Shown: in pieces, positions 81 to 63,758 of the stretch
Position numbering within the stretch: position 1 is the first letter of the stretch
How the letters are laid out: each line of letters starts with the position of its first letter
From: Scyliorhinus canicula
Lineage: Eukaryota
Assembly (NCBI RefSeq): GCF_902713615.1
Contig: NW_024055654.1
Location: 2,149,674-2,213,673 of the forward strand
Direction of reading: 5' to 3'
Length of the DNA: 64,000 bases
Notes under the pieces: generated by a model
What the model saw: the letters and a program-made list of their open reading frames with translations, nothing else
Told to the model about the DNA's origin: nothing
Database searches by the model: none
Position numbers and translations under genes: made by a program

Positions 81-378
81 GAACAAATGGCAAAGATGAA
101 GTGTTCCAGGATCCCCCTGAATTAACAGTTCTGGAAGGACGGGCAATAACACTGGGCTGCAGCTACTCGACAATTGGTGCTCCAACTCTGTTCTGGTACA
201 TCCAGTCTCCCGGAGAAGCTCCGAAATATGTATTCAAGATATATAGCTCAGGAGCTACGTCTCAAGATTTGCCAGCCAGGTTCTCGGCTATTTTAAACAA
301 AGAAAACAAAACGGTTCCTTTAAATATCGCCGCGGCGCTTCTCTCCGACACAGCCGTGTATTTCTGTGCCTTGCAGCC
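81..378 (+). CDS. TRAV: T-cell receptor alpha/delta variable exon (TRAV-like), open frame; leader exon lies upstream of the window
   Basis: Intron 1-80 (gtgagt...ttgcag). Phase-1 exon reads (G)TNGKDEVFQDPPELTVLEGRAITLGCSY...LFWYIQ...DTAVYFCALQ, with Cys23, Trp41 and Cys104 intact and no stop, followed directly by an RSS. Confidence 0.9.
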
Positions 379-6659: not shown

Positions 6660-8473
6660 GGGAATTAAACAAAATTCAACAAAATACAAGAAAATACATG
6701 GGACTACGTAATAGGGCAACACAAGATATACAATGTAACTGCATATGCATTGGCATCGGTTGAAGCACACAGGGTGTAGTGTTAATGAGGTCAGTCAATA
6801 AGAGGGTCATTTAGGAGTCTGGTGACAGTCGGGAAGAAGCTGTTTTTGAGTCTGTTCGTGCGTGTTCTCAAACTTCTGTATCTCCTGCCCGATGGAAGTT
6901 GGAAAAGTGAGCAAGGCGGGTGGGAGGGATCCTTGATTATGCTGCCCTCTTTCCCCCGCAGCGGGAGGTGTAGATGAAGTCCATGGATGGGAGGCAGGTT
7001 CGTGTGATGGACTGGGCGATATTCACAACTCTCTGAAGTTCCTTGCGGTCCTGGGCCGAGCAGTTGCCATACCAGGCTGTGATGCAGCCCGATAGGATGC
7101 TTTCTGTAGTGCACGTGTAAAAGTTGGTAAGGGTTAATGTGGACATGCCGAATTTTCTTAGTTTCCTGAGGAAGTGTAGGCGCTGTTGTGCTTTCTTGGT
7201 GATAGCGTCGACGTGAGTGGACCAGGACAGAGTTTTGGTGATGTGCACCCCTAGGAATTTGAAACTGCTAACCATCTCCACCTCGTCCACGTTGATGCTG
7301 ACAGGGGTGTGTACAGTACTTTGCTTCCTGAAGTCGATGACCAGCTCTTTAGTTTTGCTGGCATTGAGGGAGAGATTGTTGTCGTTCCACCACTCCACTA
7401 GGTTCTCTATCTCCCTCCTGTATTCGGACTCGTCGTTATTCAAGATCCGGCCCACTCTGGTCGTATAGTCAGCCAACTTGTAGATGGAGTTGCAACCAAG
7501 TTTTGCCACGCAGTCGTATGTGTACAGGGAGTAGAGTAGGGGGCTAAGTACCCAGCCTTGCGGGGCACCGGTATTGAGGACTATTGTGGAGGAGGTGTTG
7601 GTGTTCATTCTCACTGATTGTGGTCTGTTGGTCAGAAAGTCAGGGATCCAGTTGCAGAGTGGAGAGCCAAGTCCTAGGTTTTGGAGCTTTGATATGAGCT
7701 TGGCTGGGATTATGGTGTTGAAGTCGGAGCTGTAGTCAATAAATAAATGAATGAAAAATGAAAATCCCTTATTGTCACGAGTAGGCTTCAATGAAGTTAC
7801 TGTGAAAAGCCCCGAGTCACGACATTCCGGCACCTGGTACAGGAATCGAACCGTGCTGTTGGCCTGCTTGGTCTGCTTTAAAAGCCAGCGATTTAGCCTG
7901 GTGAGTTTCACCAGCCCTTGGAGTCTGATGTAGGAGTCCTTGTTTTCGAGATGCACTAGAGATGAGTGTAGGGCCAGGGAAATGGCGTCTGATGTGGACC
8001 GGTTGCGACGGTATGCGAATTGAAGTGGGTCAAGGCGTTCTAGGAGTATGGAGGTGATGCGCTTCATGATCAGCCTCTCGAAGCACTTCATTACAACTGA
8101 CGTCAGGGCCGCCGGAGGGTAGTCATTGAGGCATGTTGCCTCGTTCTTCTTTGGTATCGGTATGATGGTGGTCTTCTTGAAGCAGGTGGGGACCTCGGTG
8201 TGGAGTAGGGATAGGTTAAAGATGTCTGTGAATACCTCTGCCAGCTGGTATGCGCAGGCTCTGAGTGCATGACCAGGGATCCCGTCCGGGCCCATCGCCT
8301 TCCGTGGGTTCACTTTCAGGAAGGCCGATCTGACTTCGGAAACTTGATGGTGGGTATAGGTGAATTAAGAGCTGCTGGGATACTCGACAGCGGATTGTTG
8401 GTTACCTGCTCAAACCGAGCATAGAATGTATTAAGTTCGTCGGGAAGGGATGCGCTGCTGCCAGAGATACAGC
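6660..8473 (-). mobile_element. Rex1/Babar-type LINE, RT region plus 3' UTR, inactive
   Basis: ORF 6937-8313 has RT motifs ([48 protein letters not shown]). Catalytic ADD is mutated to ADY, and the ORF is interrupted by a SINE. Confidence 0.9.
7746..7919 (-). mobile_element. Short SINE (174 bp) inserted in frame in the Rex1 RT
   Basis: gggctggtgaaactcaccaggctaaatcgctggc... family. Absent from the paralogous LINE copies at 19.5, 27.5 and 31.7 kb. Confidence 0.85.
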
Positions 8474-9337: not shown

Positions 9338-9975
9338 GACAACAGGATCACAACTCTGTGCATTTCAACAGTGACGGCCAATCCTCTGATTGCCAGGGTC
9401 CGAATGAGAATGCTGGTAATATTGGTCCCCTGAGGCAGTGCGGAAAATATCTGGAAGGAGCGGACACATGGTCCCGCGGGCATGGACATTTGTGAGACGT
9501 GGAATCATCACAGGCCCGTGGATTTTACAGAACTCACTTGGACAGCACCACACTTTCTTTGAAACACGTCCCTTATCTGGGAACCTCCATAACAGAAAGC
9601 AGGAAGTGTCAACATAGATTTGATGTATTTTCGATCAGAAAGTCGATGTTCCGCTGAAGACTACTAGGGGCTCAGACTCATTGGCATAAGGTCGACCTAA
9701 ATTAACGGTCCTGGAAGATTTTATTATCCCCACATCTGAGAACTTTCATTACTGCTGCTCGGAAGTGGATATTCCAAGCTTAAATTTACTGTGCATCGCG
9801 ACATGCTGATTAATCTCGCGAATCCGAAACGGCTCCTCTATTGACCTATACAAGGACAGAGACGGCAATGCAATTGTGGAGAAATAGACCTGAGTATTTT
9901 TCTGAATCCTGATCAAACCATCCTCCGGTACAAGGGCAGGAACGCAAATTTACTGGAATTGAAAATACTCTCTGA

Positions 9976-10014
9976 GGCTTTCGTACGTGGTGGTAGCTGC
10001 TTTGTGACACTGTG
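9976..10014 (-). promoter_or_regulatory. 23-RSS
   Basis: CACAGTG, 23 nt, ACGAAAGCC. Confidence 0.85.
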
Positions 10015-10256
10015 CTCATTGCACAGTAATAGACCGCCCCGTCCTCCACACTGAGCGCGTTTATATTGAGGTAACCATTCTTTTTAGACTTGTTGGCAGC
10101 CGCCAGATATCGTCCTGAGATCTCCTCTTTCTTCATCGTCAATATGTTAATGATGACCATTCTCGGCGGCTGTGCCGGCTTTTGCTGATACCATAGCATG
10201 TGGTACATCGTCCGGTCTGTATATTCGCAATCTACCTGCACTGAACCCCCTTCTGA
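10015..10256 (-). pseudogene. 5'-truncated TCR alpha/delta V exon (open frame; no leader, acceptor or FR1 start)
   Basis: SEGGSVQVDCEY...MLWYQQKPAQPP...ISGRYLA...EDGAVYYCAM. Joined at 10256/10257 to the tRNA repeat unit. Confidence 0.9.
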
Positions 10257-50107: not shown

Positions 50108-51082
50108 TTACACGGCGCAGCAATGTGCTCTCCATTGAAAGTTCTGGGACCTGAAAATGTACAGCATGGGATTAAGGAAAGCAGATAATGAAGTGAGGGC
50201 CCAGGTGTAAATCTTAACATGGCACATATAAAAAACTGATATTCTATTGAATGGACCTATCAGACCCTCACTCGAAAAATACAGTTGTGGGATGTGAAAA
50301 GGGGCAAAGCAGAAAAGTAGAACAGCCAGAATTCCTGAAATGGTCCTTAGCACTTGCGTCTTCATCAGCTTCATTGATTCCTTTCCAGCTCCTACTTCTC
50401 TCAGCTTCTTTGCAGTCAGAGCATAGCAGATCAACAGGGCCAGAACTGGAATGACAAATGATACCATTTCACAAACTAGCATGAAGATTTGCAAAGGCTT
50501 CCTCATTAATATCTTATCCTTACATGAGATGCTTTCATCTACGATGTTTCTTTTGAAGTGAAAGGCAGCCACACTCAAGCTTAACACTAACAACCATATT
50601 ACAATGGACAGGGCGACGTAGTATCGGGGTCTTCGCCAGTTATGACACCTGATTGGATGGACAACCGCGATGTACTGATCAATAGCAATGCAGGCCATGA
50701 ATGGTGGGTTGCCAAAAATGTTGACTGTACCGATGAGCAGATGGGCTTCAAGGAGACGCTTCGTGAACTTAATTTGTTGGATCAAATGAATGAGATAAAA
50801 TATAGAAGCCAGGATCACCAAGACGTTGGTGATGGTTAAATCAAGCAGGAGAACAGCAGTTGCTGATGAAACTTTCTTTCGTCTTGTGATGTACCACAAT
50901 GAAATTGAGTTCCCAGCCACGCCCAACACTACAGTGAAGCTGAGAAGACAAGGGAGGACGAGCGTTTCAATCCGTTCCATGGCTTCGAAGTGCCCGAGAC
51001 TTGCATTTCCAGTATGGCTGGCTGCGGTGACCTCCGTCCAAGGACGGCTGCCTGTTGCATTCCAGGTCATAAACGTAGCCAT
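50108..51082 (-). CDS. Intronless rhodopsin-class GPCR, P2Y/LPAR4-6/PAR-like (delta group), 324 aa
   Basis: Seven hydrophobic segments; TM1 GN, DQYIAVVHP, TM4 W, TM5 FVIP...CY, TM6 FCFAPFH, TM7 LNPMLY; N-terminal NxT/S sites. Confidence 0.9.
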   Translation of the reverse strand: MATFMTWNATGSRPWTEVTAASHTGNASLGHFEAMERIETLVLPCLLSFTVVLGVAGNSISLWYITRRKKVSSATAVLLLDLTITNVLVILASIFYLIHLIQQIKFTKRLLEAHLLIGTVNIFGNPPFMACIAIDQYIAVVHPIRCHNWRRPRYYVALSIVIWLLVLSLSVAAFHFKRNIVDESISCKDKILMRKPLQIFMLVCEMVSFVIPVLALLICYALTAKKLREVGAGKESMKLMKTQVLRTISGILAVLLFCFAPFHIPQLYFSSEGLIGPFNRISVFYMCHVKIYTWALTSLSAFLNPMLYIFRSQNFQWRAHCCAV

Positions 51083-51514
51083 TTGATGTTTTGATCAGAT
51101 AATATTTTTAAAAACAGCCGATGAGTAATGCGAGGAAAATGAGCAGATAGATTGTCGAATATCAGTTGGGAAATATCCTATCAATTATTCAATGTTGAAT
51201 GACGCAGTTCAGCACCTTAATGCTATCTCAGTGGTTCAGACTGCCTGTAGTTCTCCTCTGAAATGGGTGGGATACAAATGTACGTGAGGAATCTCTATGA
51301 TGCCAGGATGCCGAATTGGTGAAGTTGAATAGGTGAAATTGGAGATTGAATTCTGCAACAAGCAGATATGATCAAATGTATTAATTGCCTGAAAGTAATT
51401 ACATTTTAGAAGTTATAGAGCTAGGTATATGGACGCAGACTTGTCTCTTAATCGCACTCACCACAGTAAATGCATACATACATATTGTAGCTTCCCTACT
51501 GTGACTATGACACG

Positions 51515-51955
51515 GAATCATCGAATCCCCACAGTACATAAGGAGCCTATTCGCCCATCGCGGAAGTATTGGCCCTCCGAAAGTGCACCTACCGAGGCTC
51601 ACTGCCCCGTCCTATTCCCGTAGCCCCATAACCCCACCTAACCTGCACACCTTTGAACTGTGGGTGGGGGGGGGGGGGGGGGGGGGTCACCGCAGCCAGC
51701 CATACTGGAAATGCAAGTCTCGGGCACTTCGAAGCCATGGAACGGATTGAAACGCTCGTCCTCCCTTGTCTTCTCAGCTTCACTGTAGTGTTGGGCGTGG
51801 CCGGGAACTCAATTTCATTGTGGTACATCACAGGACCGTAGTACCCGGAGGAAATACACGCAGACATTGGGAGAAAGTACAAACTTCACACAGAAAGTAG
51901 CCCAAGGCCAGAACTCAAACCTCGGTCCCTGGCTCTGAAGCAGCAGCGCTGCCAA
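51515..51955 (-). mobile_element. HE1-like SINE interrupted by a G21 run and a 148-bp GPCR-derived insert
   Basis: SINE core breaks at ctgtggg|...acccggagg. Confidence 0.7.
51685..51832 (+). repeat. Inverted copy of GPCR coding bases 50885-51032
   Basis: 148 bp, 1 mismatch to the reverse complement. Confidence 0.95.
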
Positions 51956-54398
51956 TATGCTCCTGTGCTGCCCTGTACACTATCTGTGTATCTCAGTCCA
52001 GCTCCCGCCAGCACAAACTTGCACCCTGGCTGGAATCTCTGCGTTAGTCTCTACTTATTGTGTACGGGGAGAATATTGTTGTTCTCCCTGGTGTCTATCA
52101 GCCATTTTTCTCAGAGGGAGATACGTGCACCATCGTATTTATCGTTCCATTCGGCCGGATATATTCTTGCAGCATCCGGCCTCTTACAGTCGTCCTCCTG
52201 CAGTAAGTTACAAGCACAACTCGCGTCTCGTCTCACACGTCCCTCCCTCTCCATTGCTTCGTCAACACCATCTGCTCCCTCACCCGTTTCATTGTTCTCC
52301 TAACCCTACTCTCTAACCCTCCACCCTTGGTCTCTAATCTCTTATTTCCGCTCCTGATCCTTCATCCTCATGGTCTATTTTCTGATTCCCACACCATAAG
52401 CTCCAAACCACGTTCTTTATTCCAGCATTCCAGATTTCTACTGACCCATTCTCGCCCCTTATCCGTCATTTCTGAAATTTACTGCAGCTAATCCGGCTTG
52501 GCCCACTCAACTGCTGAAAGTGTAATTCGCTTTCTGTGTTTTGGACTGAAATAATTGTACCATTACCTGTAAACTGATCCAGAATCAATGAATATCGATG
52601 TAGACTCAGGAAGGACTGTGTTAATGTTGTTGAGAATGGGTTGTGTTCCAGAGCAAGCGGGGAATGAGGATATCTCAGGCAGCCCTTCATGCAACTTCCA
52701 ACAAGTACAAACAGCTGTGAGGTCTGGCGGCTTTTTATAGTTCCCGATTTGCATTTGGTGTCATTACTGTGCTCGTCCAAATCATTGCCAACTCATGGTT
52801 CTCACACTCTGCTTATTAGTTTGATTCGTAATGCCTACCTGGATAAAATTCCATTCTTGGCGAGAGTAGTGTTTTATTACCCACTCACTCGAGCAATTGG
52901 CGTTAAGTTCAGACCAAAACAAGATGCAGTTTTCTGACCGAATGGACATATTTCGGCATTCGATTAATTATTGACTTTGCAGTGTTAAACACAGCCCCAT
53001 TCGATTGGGATATAGGCTCCATTCTCGCCTGGGGAACGTCTTGTGCCAGAGGGACAGATGTAGAGGTTATCCCAGAACCCCACACCAATTCCGGAATAGG
53101 ATTATGTCCTCTCTACAATTGTTAAATTGATGGTTTCACGCGCGGAAACTTATATGCTCGCTCTCAGTGAAACATCCACATTTCTCACACCGAGCCCCCA
53201 GAATATTATGAGAGACGTTTCTCCCCAGTCAAACGCTGTAATAGATTAGCTGTAAGTGCACACGGATTTCCTGCCTCATGTTCCCTCCATACCATTACAT
53301 TGTTCTGGACCCTAATTGTCAGTCTCTGTCTACAGTAGATTGGATTTAACTACGCAGTAGAATTTCCATATTTGGTTGCATTTCCATGTTCTCAACACGA
53401 ACTATCAACAGAGATCTATTTCTACTCAAGGTCATTCAATAGTCTGAGCCCTATCTCGATTCTTTTTGTTGCAGCCAACATCCCATTTCTCCATCCAAAA
53501 TTTTGTTTCAGATACATCAAAGAATTTTTGAATGGGTGGATCATGTATTCACTCAAGGATCCTAAGGGAGACGGGACACGTGCTGTGGGAACCGAGTCAG
53601 CATTTTAAACACCTTAGTGGACTCTACGATAGTTTCTGTAAACTGGATGTTGGCTAATATAGTCCACATTATTTAGCAACAATGTGACTAGCCAAACCCG
53701 GGAAATTTAGGCTAATTAATTGAGCAGCAGTAATAGGATCGATATCTGGGACCATACCTTCCGGCAGAGAACTATACTTTCCTGCCTCGCTGTCAATTTA
53801 AAAAACGTATCCAACATGACTATAGCCACTACATTTCAAAATTATTTCCTTTGCTGCGAGGCGGTTGAGGAGAACTTAAGATCCTAGCGAAACTCTCGGT
53901 GAACAGCAATACTTTGTTTCATATGAATACATTTTCTGCCATTTGGGATTTCGTCATCGGAGTTAAAAGTGTGCCTGTGACTTCCCTGGAGGCCATGACG
54001 TCAGCTGCCGCGCACATGACGGCTCCGTCTCGGGAATGAAGATATTGGCAATTTCAACCCCGATAATGGGTTGTTTTTGATGTTAAGAAAAGGCACACAA
54101 ATTGTAGAACAGGCCATTCCCCGGGACTGTTATGCAGGTAACTTATTGGTCCCGGCAGAAAGCACTTCAAATCCCATCCCAGAGAAGTTTTCAATTAGTT
54201 TCCCCTTATCCGGAGACTATGATCTATCGAACTCGAGGACGCATCCGTTGCACGTCTACTTTATCCATTTATTTTATCATCTTATATACCTCAATTTGAT
54301 ATCCCCGCATTCTTCTAAACGCTGGAGAGTATAGGTCTAAACTGCTCAACCTTTCTGCATAAGACAGCCCTCTCATCTCTGAACCTCGTCTGAACTTC

Positions 54399-54834
54399 GG
54401 GGCCTCACGGTAGCATGGTGGTTAGCATCAATGCTTCACAGCTCCAGGGTCCCAGGTTCGATTCCCGGCTGGGTCACTGTCTGTGTGGAGTCTGCACGTC
54501 CTCCCCGTGTGTGCGTGGGTTTCCTCCGGGTGCTCCGGTTTCCTCCCACAGTCCAAAGATGTGCGGGTTAGGTGGATTGGCCATGCTAAATTGCCCGTAG
54601 TGTAAGGTTAATGGGGGGATTGTTGGGTTACGGGTATACGGGTTACGTGGGTTTAAGTAGGGTGATCATTGCTCGGCACAACATCGAGGGCCGAGGGGTC
54701 TGTGCTGTACTGTTTAAAAAAAAAAAAACTGCTTCCAATGCACCGGCATCGTGGGTTTGAGTAGGGTGATCATGGCTCGGCACAACATCGAGGGCCGAAG
54801 GGCCTGTTCTGTGCTGTACTGTTCTATGTTCTAT
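54399..54834 (+). mobile_element. Young HE1-like SINE with duplicated 3' tail
   Basis: Near-identical to 46344-46674; tail repeated after an A run. Confidence 0.85.
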
Positions 54835-54942
54835 CTTCCCTCCAATAAGCGGACCGAAACCGAACCCAGTACTCGCGGTACGATCTCAACAATGCGTTGC
54901 ACAGTTGCGACACTTCCTTGTCTTTTTACTCTATTTCATCAG

Positions 54943-55250
54943 CATGGTGACACAGTCGTTAGCACTGCTGCCTCACAGCTCCAGGGACCGGGGTTCAATT
55001 CCGGCCTTGCGTGACTACACTTTCTCCCAGTGCGTGCTTGGGTTTCCTCCGGTTTGCTCCCAAAGTCCAATGATGTGCAGGTTAGATGGATTGACCATGA
55101 TAAATTGCCCCTTAATATTCAAAATAGTTTGGTGGGATTACTGAGTTACTGGGATAGGGTGGAGACCTCGGCTTAAGTAGTGTGCTCTTTCCAAGGGCCG
55201 TTGAAGACTCTCTGGGCCAAACGGCCACTTTCTGCACTGCAGGGAAACTA
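54943..55250 (+). mobile_element. HE1-like SINE, diverged
   Basis: Head and core recognisable. Confidence 0.65.
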
Positions 55251-55484
55251 TTATATGATCATTGCAATCGCTTTCTTCATTTTCTGCTGCACCTGCATGC
55301 TAACATTCTGTGACTGATGTGCGAGGACACCCAGATCACTCTGAAGCGGACCTTGGTCTCTCCCAAGTTAGATAATAAGTTACCTTCCCGTTTCCACGAG
55401 AAAAATGGATGGCTTCACAAGTATCCACGTTATACACCATCTGGCACATTTTGGCCCACTCCCCTAACTTATCGATATGCACTT

Positions 55485-57378
55485 TTAAGTTCCTATTTTC
55501 TGAATTGCATATGTTTTAATGCAAGAAGTATAACATGTAAGGCAAATTAACTTAGAGCTTGGATTAGTACTTGGAACGATGATGTTGTTGACATTACAGA
55601 GACCTGGTTAGTGGAAGGGCGGGATTGGCAGCTAAATGTTCCAGCAGTTAGATATTTCAGGCAGGATAGAGGGGGATGTAAAAGGGGTGGCGGAGTTGCG
55701 CTACTGGTTAGCGAGAATATCACAACTGGAGCGCGGGAGGACACCTCAGAAGGCAGCGTGGCTAAATGGGGAGAGCTCAGGAATAAGAAGAGTGCCGTCA
55801 CAATGTTGGGGGTTTACTACAGGCCACCCAACAGCCAGCAGGAGATAGAGGAGGAGATAGGTCGACAGATTTTGGAAAGGAGTAAAGCAACAGGGTTGTT
55901 GTGATGGGAGACTTTAAGTTCCCCAATATTGACTGGGACTTAATTAGTGCTAGGGGCTTGGACGGGGCAGAGTTGTAAGGAGCATCCAGGAGGGCTTCTG
56001 AAAACAATATGTCGATGGTCCAACTAGGGAAGGGGCTATACTGGACCTGGTATTGGGGAGTGAGTCCTGCCAGGTGGTAGAAGTTTCAGTAGGGGAGCAT
56101 TTCGGGAACAGCGACCGCAATTTAATAAGTTTTAAAGTGCTGGTGAACACTAAGAGTGTTCCTAGGGTGAATGTGCTAAATTGGGGGAAGGCTAGTTATA
56201 AAAATATTCGGCAGGAACTGAAGAACCTAGATTGGAGGCGGATGTTTGAAGGTATATCAACATCTGACACGTGGGAGGCTTTCAAATGTCAGTTGAAACG
56301 ACATCAGTACCGGCATGTCATTGCGTGGAGGAAGGATAAATACGGCAAATTTCGGGAACCTTGGATAACGAGAGATACAAGAGGCCTAGTCAAAATTAAA
56401 AGGAGGCATTTGTCAGGCATAGAAGGCTGGGAACAGACGACGACTGTGTGGAATATAAAAAAAGTAGGAAGGAACTTAAGCAAGGAGTCAGGAGAGCTAA
56501 AAGGGGTCACAAAAAGTCATTGATAAATAGGGTTAAGGAAAATCCCAAGGCTTTTTACACGTACATAAAAAGCAAGAGGGTAGACAGGGAAAGGGTTGGG
56601 CCACTGAAGGGAAGGCGAGGGAATCTATGTGTGGAGCCAGAGGAAATGGGCGAGGTTATAAATGCATGCTTTGCTTCAGTATTCATCGAAGATAAGCAAT
56701 TGGTGGATGTTGAGTCTGGAGGAGGGTGTGTAGATGGCCTGGGTCACATTGAGATCCAAAAAGACGAGGTGTTGGGCGTCTTGAAAAATGTTAAGGTAGA
56801 TAAGTTCCCAGGACCTGATGGGATCTACCCCAGAATACTGAAGGAGGCTAGAGAGGAAATTGCTGAGGCCTTGACAGAAATTCTTGGATCCTCACTGTCT
56901 TGAAGTGATGTTCCAGAGGACTGGAGCATAGCCAATGTTGTTCCTTTGTTTCAGAAGGGTAGCAAGGATTATGCAGGGAAACTACAGGGCAGTGAGCCTT
57001 ACCTCAGTGGTAGGGAAATTACTGGAAAGAATTCTTCGAAACAGGATCGACTCCCATTTGGAAGCAAATGGACGTATTAGCGAGAGGTAGAATGGTTTTG
57101 TGAAAGGGAGGTCGTGTCTCACTAACTTGACAGAGTTTTTCGAGGAGGTCACAAAGATGATTGATGGAGATAGGTCAGTGGATGTAGTCTATATGGACTT
57201 CATTAAGACCTTTGACGAGGTCCCTCTGGCAGACAGGTACAAAAGGTGAAGTCACACGGGATCAGGGGTGAGCTGCCAAGATGGATACCGAACTGGCTAG
57301 GTCAAAGAAGGCAGAGAGTAGCAATGGAAGGGTGCTTTTCTGATTGGAGGGCTGTGACTAGTGGTGTTCTGCAGGGAT
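55485..57378 (+). mobile_element. CR1 LINE ORF2 (APE endonuclease plus N-terminal RT), frameshifted, 3' part missing
   Basis: NCICFNARSI, ITETWL, DRGG..RGGGVAL, GVYYRPPN, GDFKFP, KFPGPDGIYPRILKE, ending at SGVLQG. Confidence 0.9.
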
Positions 57379-59098
57379 TCCGCTTTGAGGGGGGGGGGGG
57401 GGGGGATTGGTGAGATTATGGGGATCCACGGGGAATTCGGCCAGTTTTCGGGGTCTTTATAGTTCAAGCAAGGGGACAAGAGAGGAGATTGGGGAGGATG
57501 CCGTTCAAGGAAGTGGGAGGGAGTTTTCGATATTTGGGAATGCAGGTAACGCCGGAATGAAAGCAGCTGCATAAGCTGAATTTGGCTCGGTTGGTGAAGC
57601 ACATGAAGTGGAACTTCAGAAAGTGGGATATGCTCCATCTGTCACTATTGGGGAGGGTGCAGGCGGAAAGATGACAGTTCTCCTGAGGTTTCTGTTTGTA
57701 TTTCAGACGCTGCCTATTTTTGTCATCAAAATGTTCTTTCATAGCGTGAATGCGGCGATCATCCGGTTTGTGTGGACGGGTAAAACCCCGCGTGTAAAGA
57801 AGATGCTGCTGGAGCGGGGCCGAGATGAGGGGTGTCTGGCCCTACCGAAGTTTACTCCTGGACGGCGAACATAGCAATAGTCAGTGTCTGGGTATTGGGG
57901 GAGGGGTCTGTGTGGGAGCGGGTGGCGGCGGCTTCATGTAGAAGAACAAGTTTAGAGGCACTGGTAATGGCACCTCTGCCGTTTTCGTTGGCTCGGTACT
58001 CCACAGGCTCGGTGGTAGTGGTGGCCTTGAGTGTGTGGGGACTGTGGCGGAAGCCTATGGGAGTGGAGGGGGCGTCGGTATGGGCACTAGTTTGTGGAAA
58101 CCACTGGTTTGCACAGGTGGGGCTGGATGGGGGTTTCGGAGGTTGCAGCGAGCCGGGATCTAGTGGTTTATTGACGGCAGCTTTTCGTGCTTGGAGGGTT
58201 TGGATGAGGAGTTTGAACAGCCCGGTGGAAATGGGTTCCACATTCTGCAGTGACGGACTTTGTGCGGAAGTCGTTTCGACCTTTCTGCATCTGCCACGCC
58301 AGGGAATACAGCACAAGGTAGAATCGAAAACCGGAGTGGGGGAGGGGAAGGTCTCGGAAATGTATAAAAAGCTCACAGAACGGGAGGGACCCCCGATAGG
58401 GGAGGTGAAGCGTAAGTGGGAAGAAGAATTGGACAGGGAAGTCGAGGCGAGGTTGTGGAAGGATGCCCTGAGTAGAGTCAACGCGTCTTCGTTGTGTGCC
58501 AGGCTTAGCCAGATACAATTTAAGGTGGTCCCCAGGGTGCATATGACTGTGGGCAGGCTGAGCAGGCTGAACGGGTGGAGGATATGTATGGGCGGTGTGC
58601 AGGTGGGCCCGCTAATCATTTCCGAGGCTCAGGGGATTTTGGCGAGGATTTGCCGATGTCATGTCATTAAGGGTGATTTCGAGTCCAGAGGTGGCAGAGA
58701 GAGGCTGATGTTTCTGCCTTTGCCTCCCTGGCAGCCTGGTGACGGATTTGTTGGCATGGAGGGACTCAGGGGTATGGGTTGTGACATGGCTGAGATTTTC
58801 AGGCTTGAGAAGATCAAGTTCACAGGAAGAGAATCTGTGCGTGGGTTCGCCCGGAGGTGGCATCCATTTATCGACTGCTTTGGGGAAAATCAAGCTGTTA
58901 GCAGAAAGGTGGGGTGGGGGTGTGGGGGGTGGGGGGGGGGGGGGCTGGTTGAGGTTGGAAACAGTTAGTGGAAAGGGGGACTAGTGAATTGTTTATGTAA
59001 GTCACATTGGCTGGATTTGGTTGTTGTTTGCATTGTTGTTTATCCCTCTTGAAAACTGTTAAAATTTTATATATGCCTCAATAAAACATTTTTTAAAA
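57379..59098 (+). mobile_element. L1/Tx1-clade LINE, 5'-truncated ORF2 3' half
   Basis: FRYLGMQV, LRFLFVFQTLPI...FVWTGKTPRV...G.LALP, QFKVVPR; AATAAA at 59080 and an A-rich end. Confidence 0.85.
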
Positions 59099-59896
59099 TG
59101 TTTTTTATCCTAAGCCACCAGGCCAAACACACTAGCATTTTGTTTATCAACAACAATACTTTATTTTAAAAAGTAAGATTCCATGGGTTTGGTGCAATGA
59201 CACGATATTTATTGGAAGTGCTAAAGTTGGCTTTCTAATGGACAGATCGTTAAATAAACAGTTCCACGTTGGAATGACGCGACACGACGTCCCCTTGAAA
59301 CTACATTATTTTATTGATGTTAAAACTTGTACACATTTTCCCGTTGTTGTTTTCCTGCCATTAATTTATTTCACTATATATAGAAACCAACTGAGCAGTT
59401 GGAATGTCCGTGCCTCTATTAACCTGTTCTGGGACTGTAGCGGACGCTAGAAGTGGAGAGAGATTGATGAATAATCGTCAATAGCAGTGTGAGAGCAACG
59501 TGAGAAATTTAATGTCAAGCATAATGTAGTGTCGACAGTCACCCGTTTCCGAGTGGATGAACTCAACTGTTAAAATATGAAAGTCATTATCATCCATGTA
59601 TCCCAACTTATCTACAGATCAATAAAATGATAGCAAGCGCATGAATGTATCAGCTGGATAGTTATTTACTAACACGAGATCGGAATGAGTACCCAGCACC
59701 TTCAGTTGTTTTCCTTTGTGTGATGTTCCCTCGAATAAAACATCGAGGCGAATTAAGGTTACTCGGGATCCCACTGTATTCCTTATATAGTCTTCAAACT
59801 TAGTTGGAAAAACATAAATATTGAATTCAGCTAAAGATAAAATATCCATATGATTTGTTTTATTTTTGGGAATCAGGGCAATTTTGAAAGTGTTAA

Positions 59897-60886
59897 TTAC
59901 ACGAAGCAGCAGCGTGGTCTCCAGTTAAAGTTCTGGGACCTGAAAATGTACAACAAGGGATTAAGAAACGCAGAGAAAGACGTGACAACCCATGTGTAAA
60001 ATTGAACATTACATCGGTAAAATACTGTGACTGGAGAGGATGGATCCAGCAGAACCTTTGCTCTAAAGTATAATTCAGGCACATGATAAGGGGCAAAGCA
60101 GAAAAGGAGAACAGTCAAAATCCCCCCAATTGTCATCAACACTTTTTTTTTCATCAACCTCATTGATTCCTTCCCTTTCCCGATTTCTAGCAGTTTCTTA
60201 GATGTCAGGAAATAGCAGATCAACAGGATTAGAACAGGGATCGCAAACACCATAACTTCAGAAACAAACAGGAGGATTTCCCACAGTCTCCACACTATGA
60301 CCATTTCCATGCATGGGACACTATTTGGTGATACCGTTCCCTTTATAAAAAACTCCATTAGACTCAGAGTAAATACTGCCAGCCAAGTTGCAATAGACAG
60401 CGCAACATAATATCTGCGCTTTCTCCAAGCCTGAGACCTAATGGGGTGGACGACAGCTATGTATTGGTCAACGGCAATGCAGGCCATGAATGGTGGGTTG
60501 GCACAAAGGTTGATTGTATACAGGAGAAGAATAAAATTATAATATAAATGTACTGAGACAACATGTATGGTGAACACCATAATGTTAAGCGTGGAAGCAA
60601 CAATGACCGAAAGGTTTGTGATGGTCAAATCAAGCAGGAGCACATCAGTTGCTGACGAGAGTTTTTTTGATTTTATGATGTGCCACAGTGCAATTGCGTT
60701 CCCACTGATACCTAATAGAAGCACTAAGCTAAAGAAGCAGATAAATACGGTTATTTTAGCCTGATCCAATGGGTGGGAGTTACTGTTAATTGAGGGCACG
60801 AAACTTGTATTTCTACTTTGATTGGGGGAGTGAAGCTCTGACCAGGTTGTGGTGACTGTTACATTCCATGTCATAAAACTTGCCAT
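59897..60886 (-). CDS. Intronless rhodopsin-class GPCR, paralog of 50108-51082, 329 aa
   Basis: Same motif set (GN, LLLDLTITN, NPPFMACIAVDQYIAVVHP, FCFAPYH, LNPLLY). Confidence 0.9.
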   Translation of the reverse strand: MASFMTWNVTVTTTWSELHSPNQSRNTSFVPSINSNSHPLDQAKITVFICFFSLVLLLGISGNAIALWHIIKSKKLSSATDVLLLDLTITNLSVIVASTLNIMVFTIHVVSVHLYYNFILLLYTINLCANPPFMACIAVDQYIAVVHPIRSQAWRKRRYYVALSIATWLAVFTLSLMEFFIKGTVSPNSVPCMEMVIVWRLWEILLFVSEVMVFAIPVLILLICYFLTSKKLLEIGKGKESMRLMKKKVLMTIGGILTVLLFCFAPYHVPELYFRAKVLLDPSSPVTVFYRCNVQFYTWVVTSFSAFLNPLLYIFRSQNFNWRPRCCFV

Positions 60887-63197
60887 TTGATGTTATGTAG
60901 AATAATGAAAAGCAGTGGAAAAAATAATAAAGATTCACTGTCCAATAAGAGTTGAGACCACACGTAAGATTATCGTTTGTTGAGTTGGATGTGTTTTCCT
61001 CCAGCACATCAATGATATTTCATGGATACAGCCTTCGTCATTTACTTCTCAGAAAACTATGGCTATGAAAAGTGCAGTGGCGGCAGCACGTAGGTATCAG
61101 AATCCTGTAAATTGGTAGATATGAATAAAGTTATTACAGTACTCAAAATAATATCAAGAGATATGATGTATTGAGTGCTATCAAGACATTGAGTAGAGTC
61201 CTTAATTCACTCTTTGGAAGATGTCTACCCACTGATTGTTGTCTTAATGACCCTGTCTGTGCTTGGACCTTTATCTACCCTCCTCTCTGTTTCAGGCAGA
61301 CATGTGCACACTGCCCCTGCCACAACTAACCCCATTTACTTACCTTCCGGAAGATAATTTTACACCGTCTTTCACTCCATTCACTCAGGATGGTGAGAAT
61401 CTGGCATGTCCTGACTTGGAAGGTAGTGGAGGCTTGAAACCTCACAATCTTTAAAAAGCATTTGAATCACCGTCACATTCACTGATATGAGACAATTGCT
61501 GGGAAGTGGGAATCGTTTGAGATTAGTGGTAGTTCCTTTTGGTGCAGACTCGATGGGCCGAAGGGCCTTTTTGCGCTGTGCGTATCTATGACTCTATAAT
61601 GGGGTTGTCACTAGATTAGTAATTACGATTAATACTCTGAAGACGTGGGTTCCTGGCCCACCACGGCAGACAATAAAACTCTGAAATTAATGGTCTAATG
61701 ATGACCACGACACCTTTTCCGAACATTTAAAACCCATCTGGTTCACCAATGCATTTTAGTGAAGGAAATGTGCCATCAGTACTGGCTTCCATGTGAACCC
61801 AGGCCCAAAGCAATGCAGTTGACTGTGAAAGTGCCGAACAAGCCACTTCGTTCGAAAAAAACACTCGAATGTCTACAAGAAATTACTCCAGAGAGATATA
61901 GACCATGTGACATCGGTCATGGCAATGGAAAGAACAACAGGAAACTCAGCCCTTTTGACCCTGTAATGTACTCATTACGAACACCTCGGACATTAAGTTA
62001 ATATTGGAATTAGTGCCTCAAATAATAGTAAAAGAACAACTTAATTATTCGCTGGAATCTTACATGACAGCCAGTGGCATGGACACCACCGTCACCATAC
62101 CCGACTGTCTGACTCATGGTCAGGACAGACCCAGCAGAGTTGGCGGCACCGGAGCATACAGTTAGGAGGGAATTACCCTGGTAGTCATCACCAGCGACTG
62201 TGGACACATTACGTGTGATGGTATCAAGTGAAGCATGGTCAAAGAAGCCTCTTGCTGATTACCACGTACCACATCCACCTCCCCACTCCTCAGGGCCCCG
62301 CTTCTGAATCAGAGCTCCTCCATGTTGTACACGAGTTGGGGGAAGCACAAAGGGTAAAAATAAAGCCGAAAGTTCACTCTTTGACGAACTGCAATTTCCA
62401 GTATCGAGACACATAGAACCTGCTGGCCAAGTCCAAATAGACATAAATGCAAGACTGGATCTGCGGCATTCAGTCATTCAGAAATGTACTTGACCAAACA
62501 CTCACCAGCCTACCTGCCGTTGATGCATCTGTGCATGAGAGCAGGGGTGAGAATGACCAATGGACAATTCGTGTGTAGTGGTAGACCCGTATTCACTTTC
62601 AGAATACCCTCCATCTTGTTATGTTGTTCATCATTCTAAAAGGATAGATTTCAAAAAGATCGAGCAACCCTTGAGGAGTTGTGCGCCAGCAGCAACCAAA
62701 TCGCGCTCAACGAACATTTTCCAACTGGTGGCCTGGCGTATCACCCAATGTAATATTACAAACTCGATTGGGGATCAAACAATGAGTGACAGAGTGCATG
62801 CCAGGCGCAACAGCAATTAAGGGTTAAACCTGCTGAAGTAACAGGTCAGGACTAATTGTGAATCCAAGAATTAAATCAGCAAGCAATATACAGGACTATA
62901 CAACACTACAACCAATCGATCTGATGAAAATGAAAATTTGAAATGAAAATCGCTTATTGTGGCAAGTAAGTTACTGTGAAAAGCCCCTAGTCGCCGCATG
63001 CCGGCGCCTATTCGGGGAGGCTGGTACGGGAAAGTTGTACAGTCGTGTCACATTCATCCCTGAATTGTGTTGGACAAATAAACAACTCATTGAAGGGGGG
63101 AGAGTCCACAGATATTCCCATCCGCAATGAGTTTGGAATCGGGTGTATCAGTGCAAAAGATAAGGCTGAAGTATTTGCAACAATGGTTTTTCATATT

Positions 63198-63535
63198 ATT
63201 TACAGTGCAGAAGGAGGCCATTCCGCCCATCGAGTCTGCACCAGCTCTTGGAAACAGCACCCTACCCAAGCCCATACCTCCACCCTATCCCCATAACCCA
63301 GTAGCCCCACCCAACACTAAGGGCAATTTTGGGCACTAAGGGCAATTTACCATGGCCAATCCACCTAACCTGCACATCTTTGGACTGTGGGAGGAAACCG
63401 GAGCACGCGGAGGAAACCCACGCAGACACGGGGAGAATCTGCAGCCACTGCACAGACAGTAGCCCAAGCTGGGAATCGAACCTGGGACCCTGGAGCTGTG
63501 AAGCAACAGTGCTAACTGTGCCACCGTGCTGCCCT
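63198..63535 (-). mobile_element. HE1-like SINE
   Basis: Head gggcagcacggtggcacagttagc; CR1-like tail. Confidence 0.8.
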
Positions 63536-63758
63536 GAGCAGCCCATCCTCAAATTTAGCAACGCTTGGACGATATCGAGACTTGAGCCGACAAATGGAAA
63601 ATAACATTCCTTTCACACAGGTGCCAGTCAATGATCACCTCCAACAAAAGAGGAAAAAAACAATCGACCTTTGACATTCAATGATATTAACATCGCCCAA
63701 GCCCCCACTATCAACAACATGGGCGTTACCACTGACCAGAAACTGAACTAGCGCAGCC

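What the first reader, a model, noticed from the sequence alone, without database searches (positions are those of the whole stretch)
50108..60886. Two paralogous GPCRs share loss of four class-A hallmark residues
Seen in both ORFs: TM2 LLLDLTITN puts N at 2.50 with D at 2.45. TM3 NPPFMACIA(I/V)DQY gives R3.50Q, S3.39N and a Pro-Pro in mid-TM3. Counting back from 3.50, position 3.25 is Leu or Tyr rather than Cys, although an ECL2 Cys remains. TM7 has NPxxY. Established: D2.50/S3.39 form the sodium pocket, R3.50 is central to G-protein activation, and C3.25 makes the conserved ECL2 disulfide. Inference: both diverged copies are full-length and keep the same departures, so these look selected. 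This suggests an atypical (decoy, arrestin-biased or constitutively tuned) orphan receptor subfamily beside an immune locus.
Basis: partly seen in the sequence, partly recalled or inferred. Interest (0 to 1): 0.7.

Follow-up and report, generated by a model that had tools for sequence, protein, structure and literature searches.

The report
Shark-only receptor family lacking hallmark residues
Two intact neighbouring receptor genes belong to an undescribed, fast-evolving family found only in sharks and rays, which has lost the arginine that almost all such receptors use to switch on G proteins, so how it signals is an open question.

Summary
Both minus-strand ORFs (50108-51082, 324 aa; 59897-60886, 329 aa) are intact single-exon class-A GPCRs, 50% identical. 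Both carry D2.45/N2.50, no Cys at 3.25, N3.39-P3.40-P3.41, DQY and NPxxY.

They belong to a family found only in elasmobranchs (six shark and three ray or skate genera). Automatic names disagree, and I found no paper on it. The family sits on a very long stem. Its sister is a canonical "LPAR6-like" orphan clade of non-mammalian vertebrates in the P2Y-like group.

- **Family-wide:** Q3.50 (16 of 17 proteins), P3.40, M3.43, L6.44, no C3.25, no P2.58, and a tail ending two residues after the helix-8 Cys-Cys.
- **Not family-wide:** N2.50 and N3.39. Rays, skates and Heptranchias keep D2.50, and the site has flipped several times.

Selection is split. The cytoplasmic half is conserved (dN/dS 0.19-0.39). 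The ligand-facing half evolves two to three times faster (0.48-1.25). Contigs from two small, probably RNA, runs cover only an ORF2 transcript-sized block.

The most likely reading is a working receptor with a non-classical output. Arrestin bias is unlikely because the tail is missing. The scan noted this same stretch before; notes on other pieces of this genome mention orphan GPCRs inside TCR V arrays.

The parts
50108..51082 (-). ORF1: intact single-exon class-A GPCR gene, 324 aa plus stop
   Evidence: AlphaFold2 model has seven helices, pLDDT 86.6 and pTM 0.84. It is 97.9% identical to S. canicula XP_038644183 over 290 aa.
59897..60886 (-). ORF2: intact single-exon paralog, 329 aa plus stop
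   Evidence: It is 93.0% identical to S. canicula XP_038644186. Nucleotide similarity to ORF1 is confined to the coding sequence.
50825..50851 (-). ORF1 TM2 motif LLLDLTITN (D2.45, N2.50)
60614..60640 (-). ORF2 TM2 motif LLLDLTITN (D2.45, N2.50)
50672..50710 (-). ORF1 TM3 from N3.39-P3.40-P3.41 to D-Q-Y (Q codon CAG)
60461..60499 (-). ORF2 TM3 from N3.39-P3.40-P3.41 to D-Q-Y (Q codon CAA)
50741..50755 (-). ORF1 top of TM3 (LLEAH). Position 3.25 is L111; no Cys here
60533..60547 (-). ORF2 top of TM3 (LYYNF). Position 3.25 is Tyr; no Cys here
50516..50533 (-). ORF1 ECL2 segment SISCKD, holding the family-invariant Cys187
60305..60322 (-). ORF2 ECL2 segment SVPCME, holding the invariant ECL2 Cys
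50216..50230 (-). ORF1 top of TM7 (YMCHV). Cys287 is a candidate new disulfide partner of the ECL2 Cys (inferred)
   Evidence: Cys in 8 of the 9 members that cover this column..
50159..50173 (-). ORF1 NPMLY (NPxxY)
59948..59962 (-). ORF2 NPLLY (NPxxY)
50111..50122 (-). ORF1 C-terminus CCAV. The protein ends two residues after the helix-8 Cys-Cys
59900..59911 (-). ORF2 C-terminus CCFV
59241..61170 (-). Transcript-like block around ORF2, covered by contigs of two small, probably RNA, runs. It includes about 650 nt of 3' UTR with AATAAA hexamers at 59365-59370, 59309-59314 and 59208-59213
   Evidence: depth table and contig pieces; sequence

Best explanation
**Shown.** The two ORFs are working members of an elasmobranch-restricted orphan family of class-A GPCRs.
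- The family branched off a canonical 'LPAR6-like' clade of the P2Y-like group and went through a burst of change.
- Every member lost the TM3 Cys of the TM3-ECL2 disulfide and P2.58. All but one have Q in place of R3.50. All have P3.40, M3.43 and L6.44 in the activation core. All full-length members end two to four residues after the helix-8 Cys-Cys.
- Retained residues are N1.50, D3.49, Y3.51, W4.50, P5.50, Y5.58, C-F-x-P-x-H in TM6, NPxxY, the ICL2 Pro-Ile pair and the ECL2 Cys.
- Selection keeps the reading frame and the cytoplasmic half, while the extracellular half changes at or near the neutral rate.
- Tandem duplicates arise repeatedly, and the window copies lie next to a V-segment array.

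**Inferred.**
- The receptor binds a variable or lineage-specific ligand with a fast-changing pocket.
- Its conserved inner face engages a fixed partner.
- Because it carries the same Arg-to-Gln change that uncouples US28 from G proteins, and also lacks a phosphorylatable tail, it probably does not activate G proteins or recruit arrestin in the classical way.
- It would then act as a ligand sink, a co-receptor or modulator of another receptor, or through an unidentified partner.
- The D2.50N and S3.39N changes in the window copies are secondary, lineage-specific alterations of a sodium pocket whose Asp is no longer required.
For: **Identity and range**
- Pfam 7tm_1 match and a confident seven-helix model.
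- All family hits are elasmobranch. Scores drop from at least 311 bits to 173 bits for the next protein.
- The family is monophyletic with 100% support on a stem of 1.6-1.7 changes per site. After five long rows were removed it is sister to the LPAR6-like clade, SH-aLRT 94.
- That sister clade is canonical and widespread in non-mammalian vertebrates.

**Residues**
- Family against 58 relatives; per-protein table.

**Selection**
- Window pair: dN/dS 0.34-0.44 overall, inner half 0.19-0.27, outer half 0.48-0.60.
- Skate pair: 0.78-0.95 overall, inner 0.33-0.39, outer 1.07-1.25.
- All amino-acid differences between the two Heptranchias tandem copies lie in the outer half.
- Skate flanks have 12 indels in 1145 aligned nt, against one in-frame 6-nt indel in 975 nt of coding sequence.
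- Only 0.75% of random-substitution simulations stayed free of stop codons.
- Paralog DNA similarity ends at the coding-sequence borders.
- The Gln codon differs synonymously between the two window copies.

**Expression**
- Contigs of runs X9 (239 million letters) and X10 (43 million letters) cover 59241-61170 and almost none of the unique intergenic DNA beside it. A DNA run covers the whole stretch evenly.

**Mechanism**
- US28 R129Q, written 'DQY', is used as a G-protein-uncoupled mutant (PMC5153698).
- The 16-residue tail holds one Ser/Thr.
Against: - No functional assay exists, and the ligand, tissue and partner are unknown.
- The conserved inner face keeps the residues that normally serve G-protein or arrestin docking (Y5.58, Y7.53, the ICL2 Pro-Ile pair, basic ICL2 and ICL3). 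Residual or adapted G-protein coupling is therefore not excluded.
- One member (Mustelus) has DRY.
- Whole-gene dN/dS near 0.9 in skates could partly reflect relaxed constraint rather than diversifying selection. I had too few coding sequences for site-model tests.
- X9 and X10 are only guessed to be RNA. An oligo-dT RNA run of the same species label showed no reads on ORF2.
- The sister-group placement has only 94% SH-aLRT support, and only after long branches were removed.
Confidence: 0.55

Rival explanations
1. Ordinary G-protein-coupled sensory or immune receptors. Gln at 3.50 is tolerated or compensated, and the family is simply a fast-evolving, ligand-diversifying receptor family comparable to chemosensory, MRGPR-like or FPR-like expansions, with normal signalling.
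For: - The cytoplasmic half is under purifying selection and keeps Y5.58, Y7.53, NPxxY, the ICL2 Pro-Ile pair and K/R6.30.
- The outer half evolves fast, and the genes duplicate in tandem in the window and in Heptranchias.
- Several near-identical copies sit on different S. canicula scaffolds.
Against: - R3.50 is present in all 58 nearest relatives. By general knowledge it is present in nearly all G-protein-activating class-A receptors.
- The identical substitution uncouples US28 from G proteins.
- The PIF-type core (3.40, 6.44) and 3.43 are also replaced.
Confidence: 0.3
2. Arrestin-biased receptor, one of the first reader's options. It signals or internalises through beta-arrestin without G proteins, as ACKR3 does.
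For: The DRY motif is altered as in several atypical receptors. The inner face is conserved.
Against: - The C-tail ends 16 residues after NPxxY and holds one Ser/Thr.
- ICL3 is short and holds one or two Ser/Thr.
- The sister clade does have a long, Ser/Thr-rich tail. The part normally phosphorylated for arrestin binding was therefore lost.
Confidence: 0.07
3. Decaying or functionless copies. The hallmark losses reflect relaxed constraint in duplicated genes on their way to becoming pseudogenes.
For: - Whole-gene dN/dS is 0.78-0.95 in the skate pair, with substitutions nearly equal across codon positions (60, 47, 61).
- Coding identity is only slightly above flank identity, 82.8% against 78-80%.
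Against: - The six coding sequences read at DNA level, from four species, are intact ORFs of 324-329 codons. Four further protein models run full length to the family's C-terminal motif.
- Coding indels are in frame only, against 12 indels in the flanks.
- The chance of staying stop-free under random substitution is 0.75%.
- Inner-half dN/dS is 0.17-0.39 in all comparisons of diverged copies.
- Blocks of about 30 residues are identical or nearly so between skates.
- Paralog flanks have diverged beyond recognition while the coding sequence is retained.
- ORF2 has transcript-like coverage.
Confidence: 0.05

Closest known systems
Unnamed 'lysophosphatidic acid receptor 6-like' orphan clade of non-mammalian vertebrates (for example S. 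canicula XP_038642959 = P0016; also other sharks, rays, coelacanth, lungfish, salamanders, caecilians, turtles, squamates, gar, bowfin and basal teleosts)
   Same: - Best non-family hit of the family profile, 173 bits.
- Sister group in the tree, SH-aLRT 94.
- Shared ICL2 H-P-I-(K/R)-S...R-R-P-R-Y, a helix-8 Trp followed by Cys-Cys (in the shark and turtle members shown), C-F-x-P-x-H in TM6 and the ECL2 Cys.
   Different: - The sister clade is canonical: N2.45, D2.50, P2.58, C3.25, S3.39 (five of six sequences), DRY or ERY, and DPxxY.
- It has an N-terminal Cys and an ECL3 Cys, and a tail of about 30 residues rich in Ser/Thr.
- It is itself uncharacterised. Its best solved relatives are GPR17, LPAR6, CysLT2 and P2Y4.
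P2Y-like (delta-branch) class-A receptors with solved structures: GPR183, P2Y4, GPR17, P2Y2, LPAR6, GPR4
   Same: - Best family-profile hits in the PDB, 119-111 bits.
- Best fold matches, TM-score 0.72-0.80.
- F6.48 and H6.52 as in many P2Y-like receptors.
   Different: - Only 18-24% identical to the best P2Y-like fold matches.
- Somatostatin and opioid receptors score almost as well, 107-109 bits, so there is no orthology to any named receptor.
- All of these receptors keep R3.50, D2.50 and C3.25.
Atypical (non-G-protein) receptors with altered DRY motifs, such as atypical chemokine receptors, C5aR2 and zebrafish Cxcr3.3 (my own knowledge; PMC7028096 was seen only as a listed abstract)
   Same: These are natural class-A receptors in which loss or alteration of the DRY arginine goes with ligand scavenging or regulation instead of G-protein signalling. 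This is a functional analogy.
   Different: - The family is not placed with chemokine-type rows in the trees.
- By my own knowledge, those receptors keep the TM3-ECL2 disulfide and have phosphorylatable tails that engage arrestins. Here both are missing.
- No ligand is known.
HCMV US28 R129Q ('US28-DQY') laboratory mutant
   Same: [quoted passage not shown]
   Different: It is an engineered point mutant of a viral chemokine receptor, not a natural family. The effect of the mutation on another scaffold is an extrapolation.

Membership tests
Class A (rhodopsin-like) GPCR, Pfam PF00001 | Significant full-length match to the 7tm_1 profile and a seven-helix fold | tested here: met
   104.8 and 103.9 bits against a cut-off of 30.5, profile positions 1-260 of 260. 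The AlphaFold2 model has seven TM helices, pLDDT 86.6.
Class A (rhodopsin-like) GPCR, Pfam PF00001 | Reference residues N1.50, W4.50, P5.50, P6.50 and NPxxY | tested here: met
   N58, W163, P212, P261 and N304-P305-x-x-Y308 in ORF1. W4.50 and P5.50 are invariant in the family; N1.50, P6.50 and NPxxY are near-invariant.
Class A (rhodopsin-like) GPCR, Pfam PF00001 | D/E-R-Y with R3.50 | tested here: not met
   Q136 in ORF1 and Q141 in ORF2. Q in 12 of 13 aligned family rows, against R in 58 of 58 relatives.
Class A (rhodopsin-like) GPCR, Pfam PF00001 | C3.25-ECL2 disulfide | tested here: not met
   Position 3.25 is never Cys in 17 family proteins. ORF1 has no Cys between residues 45 and 131. The ECL2 Cys is retained.
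Class A (rhodopsin-like) GPCR, Pfam PF00001 | Sodium-pocket residues D2.50 and S3.39 | tested here: not met
   N2.50 and N3.39 in both window ORFs. D2.50 is kept in skates, Narcine and Heptranchias, and S3.39 in several members.
P2Y-like / delta-branch cluster (P2Y, CysLT, GPR17, LPAR4-6, GPR183) | Phylogenetic placement within or next to the cluster | tested here: met
   Sister to the LPAR6-like orphan clade, SH-aLRT 94, after long rows were removed. Best PDB profile hits are GPR183, P2Y4 and GPR17. Placement was unstable while a long lungfish row was present.
P2Y-like / delta-branch cluster (P2Y, CysLT, GPR17, LPAR4-6, GPR183) | F6.48 and H6.52 in TM6 | tested here: met
   C-F-A-P-(F/Y)-H in TM6. 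F in 12 of 13 and H in 13 of 13 rows.
P2Y-like / delta-branch cluster (P2Y, CysLT, GPR17, LPAR4-6, GPR183) | P2.58, and a second disulfide from the N-terminus to ECL3 | tested here: not met
   No Pro at 2.58, against 56 of 58 relatives. No N-terminal Cys. Only the Cys at the top of TM7 remains.
Somatostatin / opioid receptors (names given by automatic annotation) | Orthology, and the ligand-anchoring D3.32 | tested here: not met
   Only 23-27% identity. The somatostatin-receptor rows lie in a distant part of the tree. Position 3.32 is G, N, Y, S or T in the family.
LPAR6, GPR183, CXCR1, P2Y2 (other automatic names) | Orthology to the named receptor | tested here: not met
   Nine or more different names are applied to one monophyletic family. 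The family forms its own clade with 100% support.
Atypical / scavenger receptors (functional class) | Ligand binding without G-protein activation; internalisation or scavenging | not testable with these tools
   Only sequence correlates are available: Q3.50 and the missing tail.

The most novel reading that the evidence does not exclude
This is a natural class-A receptor family that gave up three things at once: the G-protein arginine, the arrestin-binding tail and the canonical TM3-ECL2 disulfide. The disulfide may be rewired to an ECL2-TM7 bond between the two 'orphaned' cysteines. The family still keeps a strongly conserved cytoplasmic face while its ligand face diversifies. It would then signal through an unrecognised intracellular partner, or act as a ligand sink, in an elasmobranch-specific immune or sensory role linked to its position in T-cell-receptor V arrays.
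Probability: 0.25. Interest if true: 0.75.

Novelty: new variant of a known kind. Interest (0 to 1): 0.55.

Why it matters
R3.50, the TM3-ECL2 disulfide and the 3.40/6.44 core are among the most constant features of class-A GPCRs. This family has done without them across the whole elasmobranch radiation, yet it stays intact, appears to be transcribed and is selectively constrained on its inner face.

- **A natural experiment.** The canonical sister clade in the same genomes is a ready-made control for which parts of the activation machinery are dispensable and what replaces them.
- **Annotation.** At least nine genera carry these genes under contradictory names (opioid-, somatostatin-, LPAR6-, GPR183-, CXCR1- and P2Y2-like). 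At least one gene model, in Heptranchias, is mis-spliced although an intact single-exon ORF exists there.
- **A target for deorphanisation.** The fast-evolving outer half and the repeated tandem duplication next to V-segment arrays make it a candidate lineage-specific immune or chemosensory receptor in a group with few classical odorant receptors (that last point is my own knowledge).

Tried and rejected
- **S. canicula and other shark DNA.** Look-ups for P0005, P0002, P0003, P0004, P0010 and P0011 returned no DNA because the files are too large. I could not compute dN/dS between the window genes and their closest orthologs. Only the two skates and Heptranchias gave DNA.\n- **Exact look-up of ORF2.** Nothing on record.\n- **Substitutions from the related-species DNA run X14.** The difference table was truncated, with 338 rows not shown. 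Only piecewise divergence could be read: about 4-11% in coding pieces and 6-10% in flanks.\n- **Raw oligo-dT RNA run X22.** No reads on ORF2. The tissue is unknown, so this says little.\n- **Expression tables of the catshark 'Sensory Shark' paper.** No supplementary files are held. Its text mentions no such receptors.\n- **Literature.** No hit for a natural 'DQY' receptor or an elasmobranch-specific GPCR family.\n- **First tree.** The family joined a long lungfish row, which the tool flagged as a meeting of long branches. I rebuilt the tree without five long rows.\n- **Disulfide geometry.** The structure tool returns no coordinates, so the C187-C287 distance could not be measured.\n- **V-like segments beside the skate and Heptranchias genes.** None within 3 kb in skates. 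None in the 21-kb Leucoraja or 34-kb Heptranchias loci.


Full report
**1. The observation**

Both match Pfam 7tm_1 over the whole profile, at 104.8 and 103.9 bits against a cut-off of 30.5. They are 50% identical along their full length.

The HMMER alignment to the kappa-opioid receptor and a 71-sequence alignment fix the generic numbering. In ORF1:
- D81 = 2.45 and N86 = 2.50
- L111 = 3.25
- N125, P126, P127 = 3.39-3.41
- D135-Q136-Y137 = 3.49-3.51
- C187 in ECL2
- N304-P305-x-x-Y308 in TM7

ORF2 is the same except for Tyr at 3.25. ORF1 has no Cys between residues 45 and 131. ORF2's only Cys in that stretch aligns with ORF1 position 123 (3.37), deep in TM3. So no shift of register can supply a Cys at the top of TM3.

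Among the 58 nearest other class-A sequences in the same alignment, D2.50 and R3.50 occur in 58 of 58, C3.25 in 57, P2.58 in 56 and S3.39 in 46.

The two genes start with a conserved M-A-(T/S)-F...W-N motif and a good Kozak context. N-glycosylation sequons in the N-terminus are consistent with that start.

**2. What the genes are**

Two searches were run: a word-indexed search of 5.8 billion proteins, and an exhaustive profile search of 1.84 billion cluster representatives. Close relatives appeared only in elasmobranchs.
- Sharks: Scyliorhinus, Mustelus, Heterodontus, Carcharodon, Chiloscyllium and Heptranchias.
- Rays and skates: Leucoraja, Rhinoraja and Narcine.

Family members score at least 311 bits. 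The next protein scores 173.

Automatic names for this one family disagree. They include kappa-opioid-like, somatostatin 1/4/5-like, LPAR6-like, GPR183-like, CXCR1-like and P2Y2-like. No chimaera, bony-fish or tetrapod member appeared. That is not proof of absence, because single-exon genes are often left unannotated.

In trees the family is monophyletic with 100% support, on a stem of 1.6-1.7 substitutions per site. With a long lungfish row present, the family joined that row, and the tool flagged the join as a meeting of long branches. After five long rows were removed, it is sister (SH-aLRT 94) to a clade of 'LPAR6-like' orphans.

That sister clade is also present in S. canicula. It is widespread in sharks, rays, coelacanth, lungfish, amphibians, turtles, squamates and basal ray-finned fishes. 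It is canonical: N2.45, D2.50, P2.58, C3.25, mostly S3.39, D/E-R-Y, DPxxY and a long Ser/Thr-rich tail. Its best solved relatives are GPR17, LPAR6, CysLT2 and P2Y4.

The family profile itself hits GPR183, P2Y4 and GPR17 best, at 119-111 bits. Somatostatin and opioid receptors follow closely at 107-109 bits.

The AlphaFold2 model of ORF1 is confident (pLDDT 86.6, pTM 0.84).
- It has seven helices and a 6-residue ECL1.
- TM3 is continuous despite the Pro-Pro.
- The last 13 residues form no confident helix 8.
- Its best fold matches are GPR183, LPAR4/6, GPR17, GPR4 and GPR68, at 18-24% identity.

The genes are therefore a highly derived, elasmobranch-specific offshoot of the P2Y-like group. They are not orthologs of any named receptor. 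Literature searches found no description of the family or of a natural D-Q-Y receptor.

**3. Which departures are family-wide**

Across 17 family proteins, or 13 aligned rows:

| Feature | Result |
|---|---|
| Q3.50 | 16 of 17 proteins; Mustelus has R |
| P3.40, M3.43, L6.44 | 13 of 13 rows |
| Cys at 3.25 | never |
| Pro at 2.58 | never |
| D2.45 | all but Chiloscyllium and one S. canicula copy |
| ECL2 Cys | 13 of 13 rows |
| N2.50 | restricted to galeomorph sharks |
| 3.39 | N, S or I |

The ECL1 W-x-F-G motif of the relatives is also gone.

Skates, Narcine and Heptranchias keep D2.50. On a tree rooted with the sister clade, position 2.50 needs at least two changes inside the family. A third follows if the outgroup's D is counted (the third is my inference). 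Asp and Asn therefore interchange there.

Three members of the ORF1 subclade (S. canicula P0002, Mustelus, Heterodontus) carry a Cys in ECL1, but the window genes do not.

The sister clade has four extracellular cysteines: N-terminus, 3.25, ECL2 and ECL3. The family keeps only the ECL2 Cys and a Cys at the top of TM7, which is present in 8 of the 9 members that cover that column. A rewired ECL2-TM7 disulfide is a reasonable inference, but I could not test it because no coordinates are returned.

The full-length proteins end two to four residues after the helix-8 Cys-Cys; the two window ORFs end two after it. The 16 residues after NPxxY contain a single Ser/Thr.

**4. Selection**

| Comparison | Whole gene | Outer half | Inner half |
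|---|---|---|---|
| Window paralogs (dS about 0.9-1.0) | 0.34-0.44 | 0.48-0.60 | 0.19-0.27 |
| Leucoraja vs Rhinoraja (dS 0.21-0.24) | 0.78-0.95 | 1.07-1.25 | 0.33-0.39 |

Values are dN/dS. I split the codons into extracellular ('outer') and cytoplasmic ('inner') halves using the model's helix boundaries. In the skate pair, substitutions are spread almost evenly over codon positions: 60, 47 and 61.

The same contrast holds in the cross-comparisons between window genes and skates. It also holds in comparisons with Heptranchias.

Between the skates, the block from 3.39 through ICL2 is identical but for one residue, and the block from TM7 to the C-terminus is fully identical. The TM2-ECL1-TM3 top and ECL2 are almost entirely replaced.

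The frame is actively kept.
- Skate flanks show 12 indels in 1145 aligned nt. The 975-nt coding sequence shows one in-frame 6-nt indel.
- Only 0.75% of simulations with the observed number of random substitutions stayed free of stop codons.

In the window, DNA similarity between the paralogs stops at the stop codon and about 11 nt upstream of the ATG. The Gln codon of D-Q-Y differs synonymously, CAG against CAA.

Heptranchias carries two tandem, intact 329-codon copies 14 kb apart and 98% identical. All their amino-acid differences are in the outer half. The annotated spliced model with an odd C-terminus (P0008) is an annotation artefact.

Together this rules out plain decay. It shows a conserved inner face combined with a rapidly changing ligand face. 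I could not separate positive selection from relaxation on the outer half with so few coding sequences.

**5. Expression**

Two small runs labelled with the window's organism are X9 (239 million letters) and X10 (43 million letters). Their contigs cover 59241-61170, at depth 2-6.
- That block is ORF2, about 650 nt downstream of it and 140-280 nt upstream.
- Beyond that block, the unique intergenic sequence out to about 62840 has almost no cover; X9 has only faint traces there.
- A DNA run of a related organism (X14) covers the whole stretch at about 24-fold depth.

Such small runs could not assemble unique genomic DNA from a genome of several gigabases. Transcription is therefore the likely source. 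The runs are only guessed to be RNA, and capture libraries are not excluded.

Three AATAAA hexamers lie where the coverage ends. A possible splice acceptor (AG at 61105-61106) and a donor near 61342 upstream of ORF2 are unverified.

The same runs hold 0.14-0.37 of ORF1's sampled words. That is weaker, index-only evidence. One oligo-dT RNA run of unknown tissue had no reads on ORF2.

**6. Context**

The first 30 kb of the window holds at least five V-set segments, at 146-373, 1577-1845, 9849-10241, 21456-21848 and 30292-30516. Four of them lie beside a 23-spacer RSS-like site; none was found beside the fifth. 'Beside an immune locus' is therefore correct.

Earlier notes of this scan mention orphan GPCRs inside TCR V arrays on other pieces of this genome. 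I did not test those notes.

S. canicula carries three ORF1-like proteins, 97-98% identical to ORF1, on three scaffolds. It also carries two P0002-like proteins and one ORF2-like protein. X10's contigs differ from the window by 3-6% and share variants with the related organism. Copy number or allelic divergence is therefore high.

No V-like sequence was found in the 21-kb Leucoraja or 34-kb Heptranchias loci.

**7. Mechanism**

*Shown:* an intact and probably transcribed receptor family that is old within elasmobranchs. Its inner face is constrained, its outer face evolves fast, and it lacks R3.50, C3.25, P2.58, the usual 3.40/3.43/6.44 core and a C-tail.

*Established elsewhere:*
- R3.50 contacts the G protein, and its replacement generally abolishes activation (my own knowledge).
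- The same Arg-to-Gln change is used as the G-protein-uncoupled US28 'DQY' mutant (PMC5153698).
- Phosphorylated tails drive arrestin binding (my own knowledge).

*Inferred:* these receptors bind variable ligands but do not signal through the classical G-protein route or the tail-dependent arrestin route. They may act as ligand sinks, as modulators of another receptor, or through an unknown partner that explains the conserved ICL2 and helix-8 face.

The main rival, at about 0.3, is that G-protein coupling survives with compensation. It is supported by retention of Y5.58, Y7.53, NPxxY and the ICL2 Pro-Ile pair.

**8. Verdict**

- An atypical, selected orphan subfamily: yes.
N2.50 and N3.39 vary within the family.
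- Arrestin bias: unlikely.

This is a new variant of a known kind, a derived P2Y-like class-A subfamily. It is undescribed as far as these searches reach, and of moderate to good interest.

Noticed in passing
window 51665-51832 (+): An inverted partial copy of ORF1's N-terminal coding region (residues 7-66, 85% amino-acid identity) lies about 600 bp upstream of ORF1 on the opposite strand. Another note of this scan also reported it.
   Followed up: partly
window 146-373, 1577-1845, 9849-10241, 21456-21848, 30292-30516: At least five immunoglobulin V-set segments. Four lie beside a heptamer / 23-spacer / nonamer RSS-like site; none was found beside the fifth. The copies at 9849-10241 and 21456-21848 are 92% identical. 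Together they form a V-gene array 20-50 kb from the GPCR pair.
   Followed up: partly
window 6937-8313 (-) and 19158-19718 (-): Reverse-transcriptase ORFs (Pfam RVT_1), which are retroelement fragments inside the V array.
   Followed up: no
window 62841-63700, also 61505-61838 and 59000-59166: Very high-copy repeats. Summed contig depth reaches thousands to millions in all runs, with many internal joints. These swamped the joint and loose-end tables of the read lay-out.
   Followed up: no
L004 10001-10990 and 24062-25051 (Heptranchias perlo): Two tandem intact single-exon 329-codon copies, 98% identical. The public gene model P0008 is spliced over 14 kb and has a wrong C-terminus. The odd C-termini of P0003, P0004 and P0009 may be similar annotation artefacts.
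   Followed up: yes
window 59377-60767 (contigs of run X10 against the window): Contigs from a run with the same species label differ from the window by 3-6% and share variants with the related organism's DNA. S. canicula also has three ORF1-like proteins, 97-98% identical to ORF1, on different unplaced scaffolds. This points to divergent alleles or unresolved recent copies.
   Followed up: partly
window 61105-61106 and about 61342 (-): A polypyrimidine tract followed by AG (a possible splice acceptor) lies about 220 nt upstream of ORF2's ATG. A consensus AAG|GTAAGT donor lies about 240 nt further upstream. Together they could mark a non-coding 5' exon. No supporting joint was listed.
   Followed up: no
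L002 1-6975 (Rhinoraja longicauda): The skate ortholog lies inside a same-strand gene model with a 1329-aa product that spans the whole locus. In Leucoraja (L003) a model with a 1171-aa product starts 7 kb downstream. I did not identify the host or neighbour gene.
   Followed up: no
C-termini of the ORFs: window 50111-50122 and 59900-59911: The proteins end in C-C-x-V. The sister clade has the same Cys-Cys at the end of helix 8, followed by a long tail. I did not examine whether the terminal C-C-x-V is only a palmitoylation site or is also a lipidation or PDZ-type signal.
   Followed up: no
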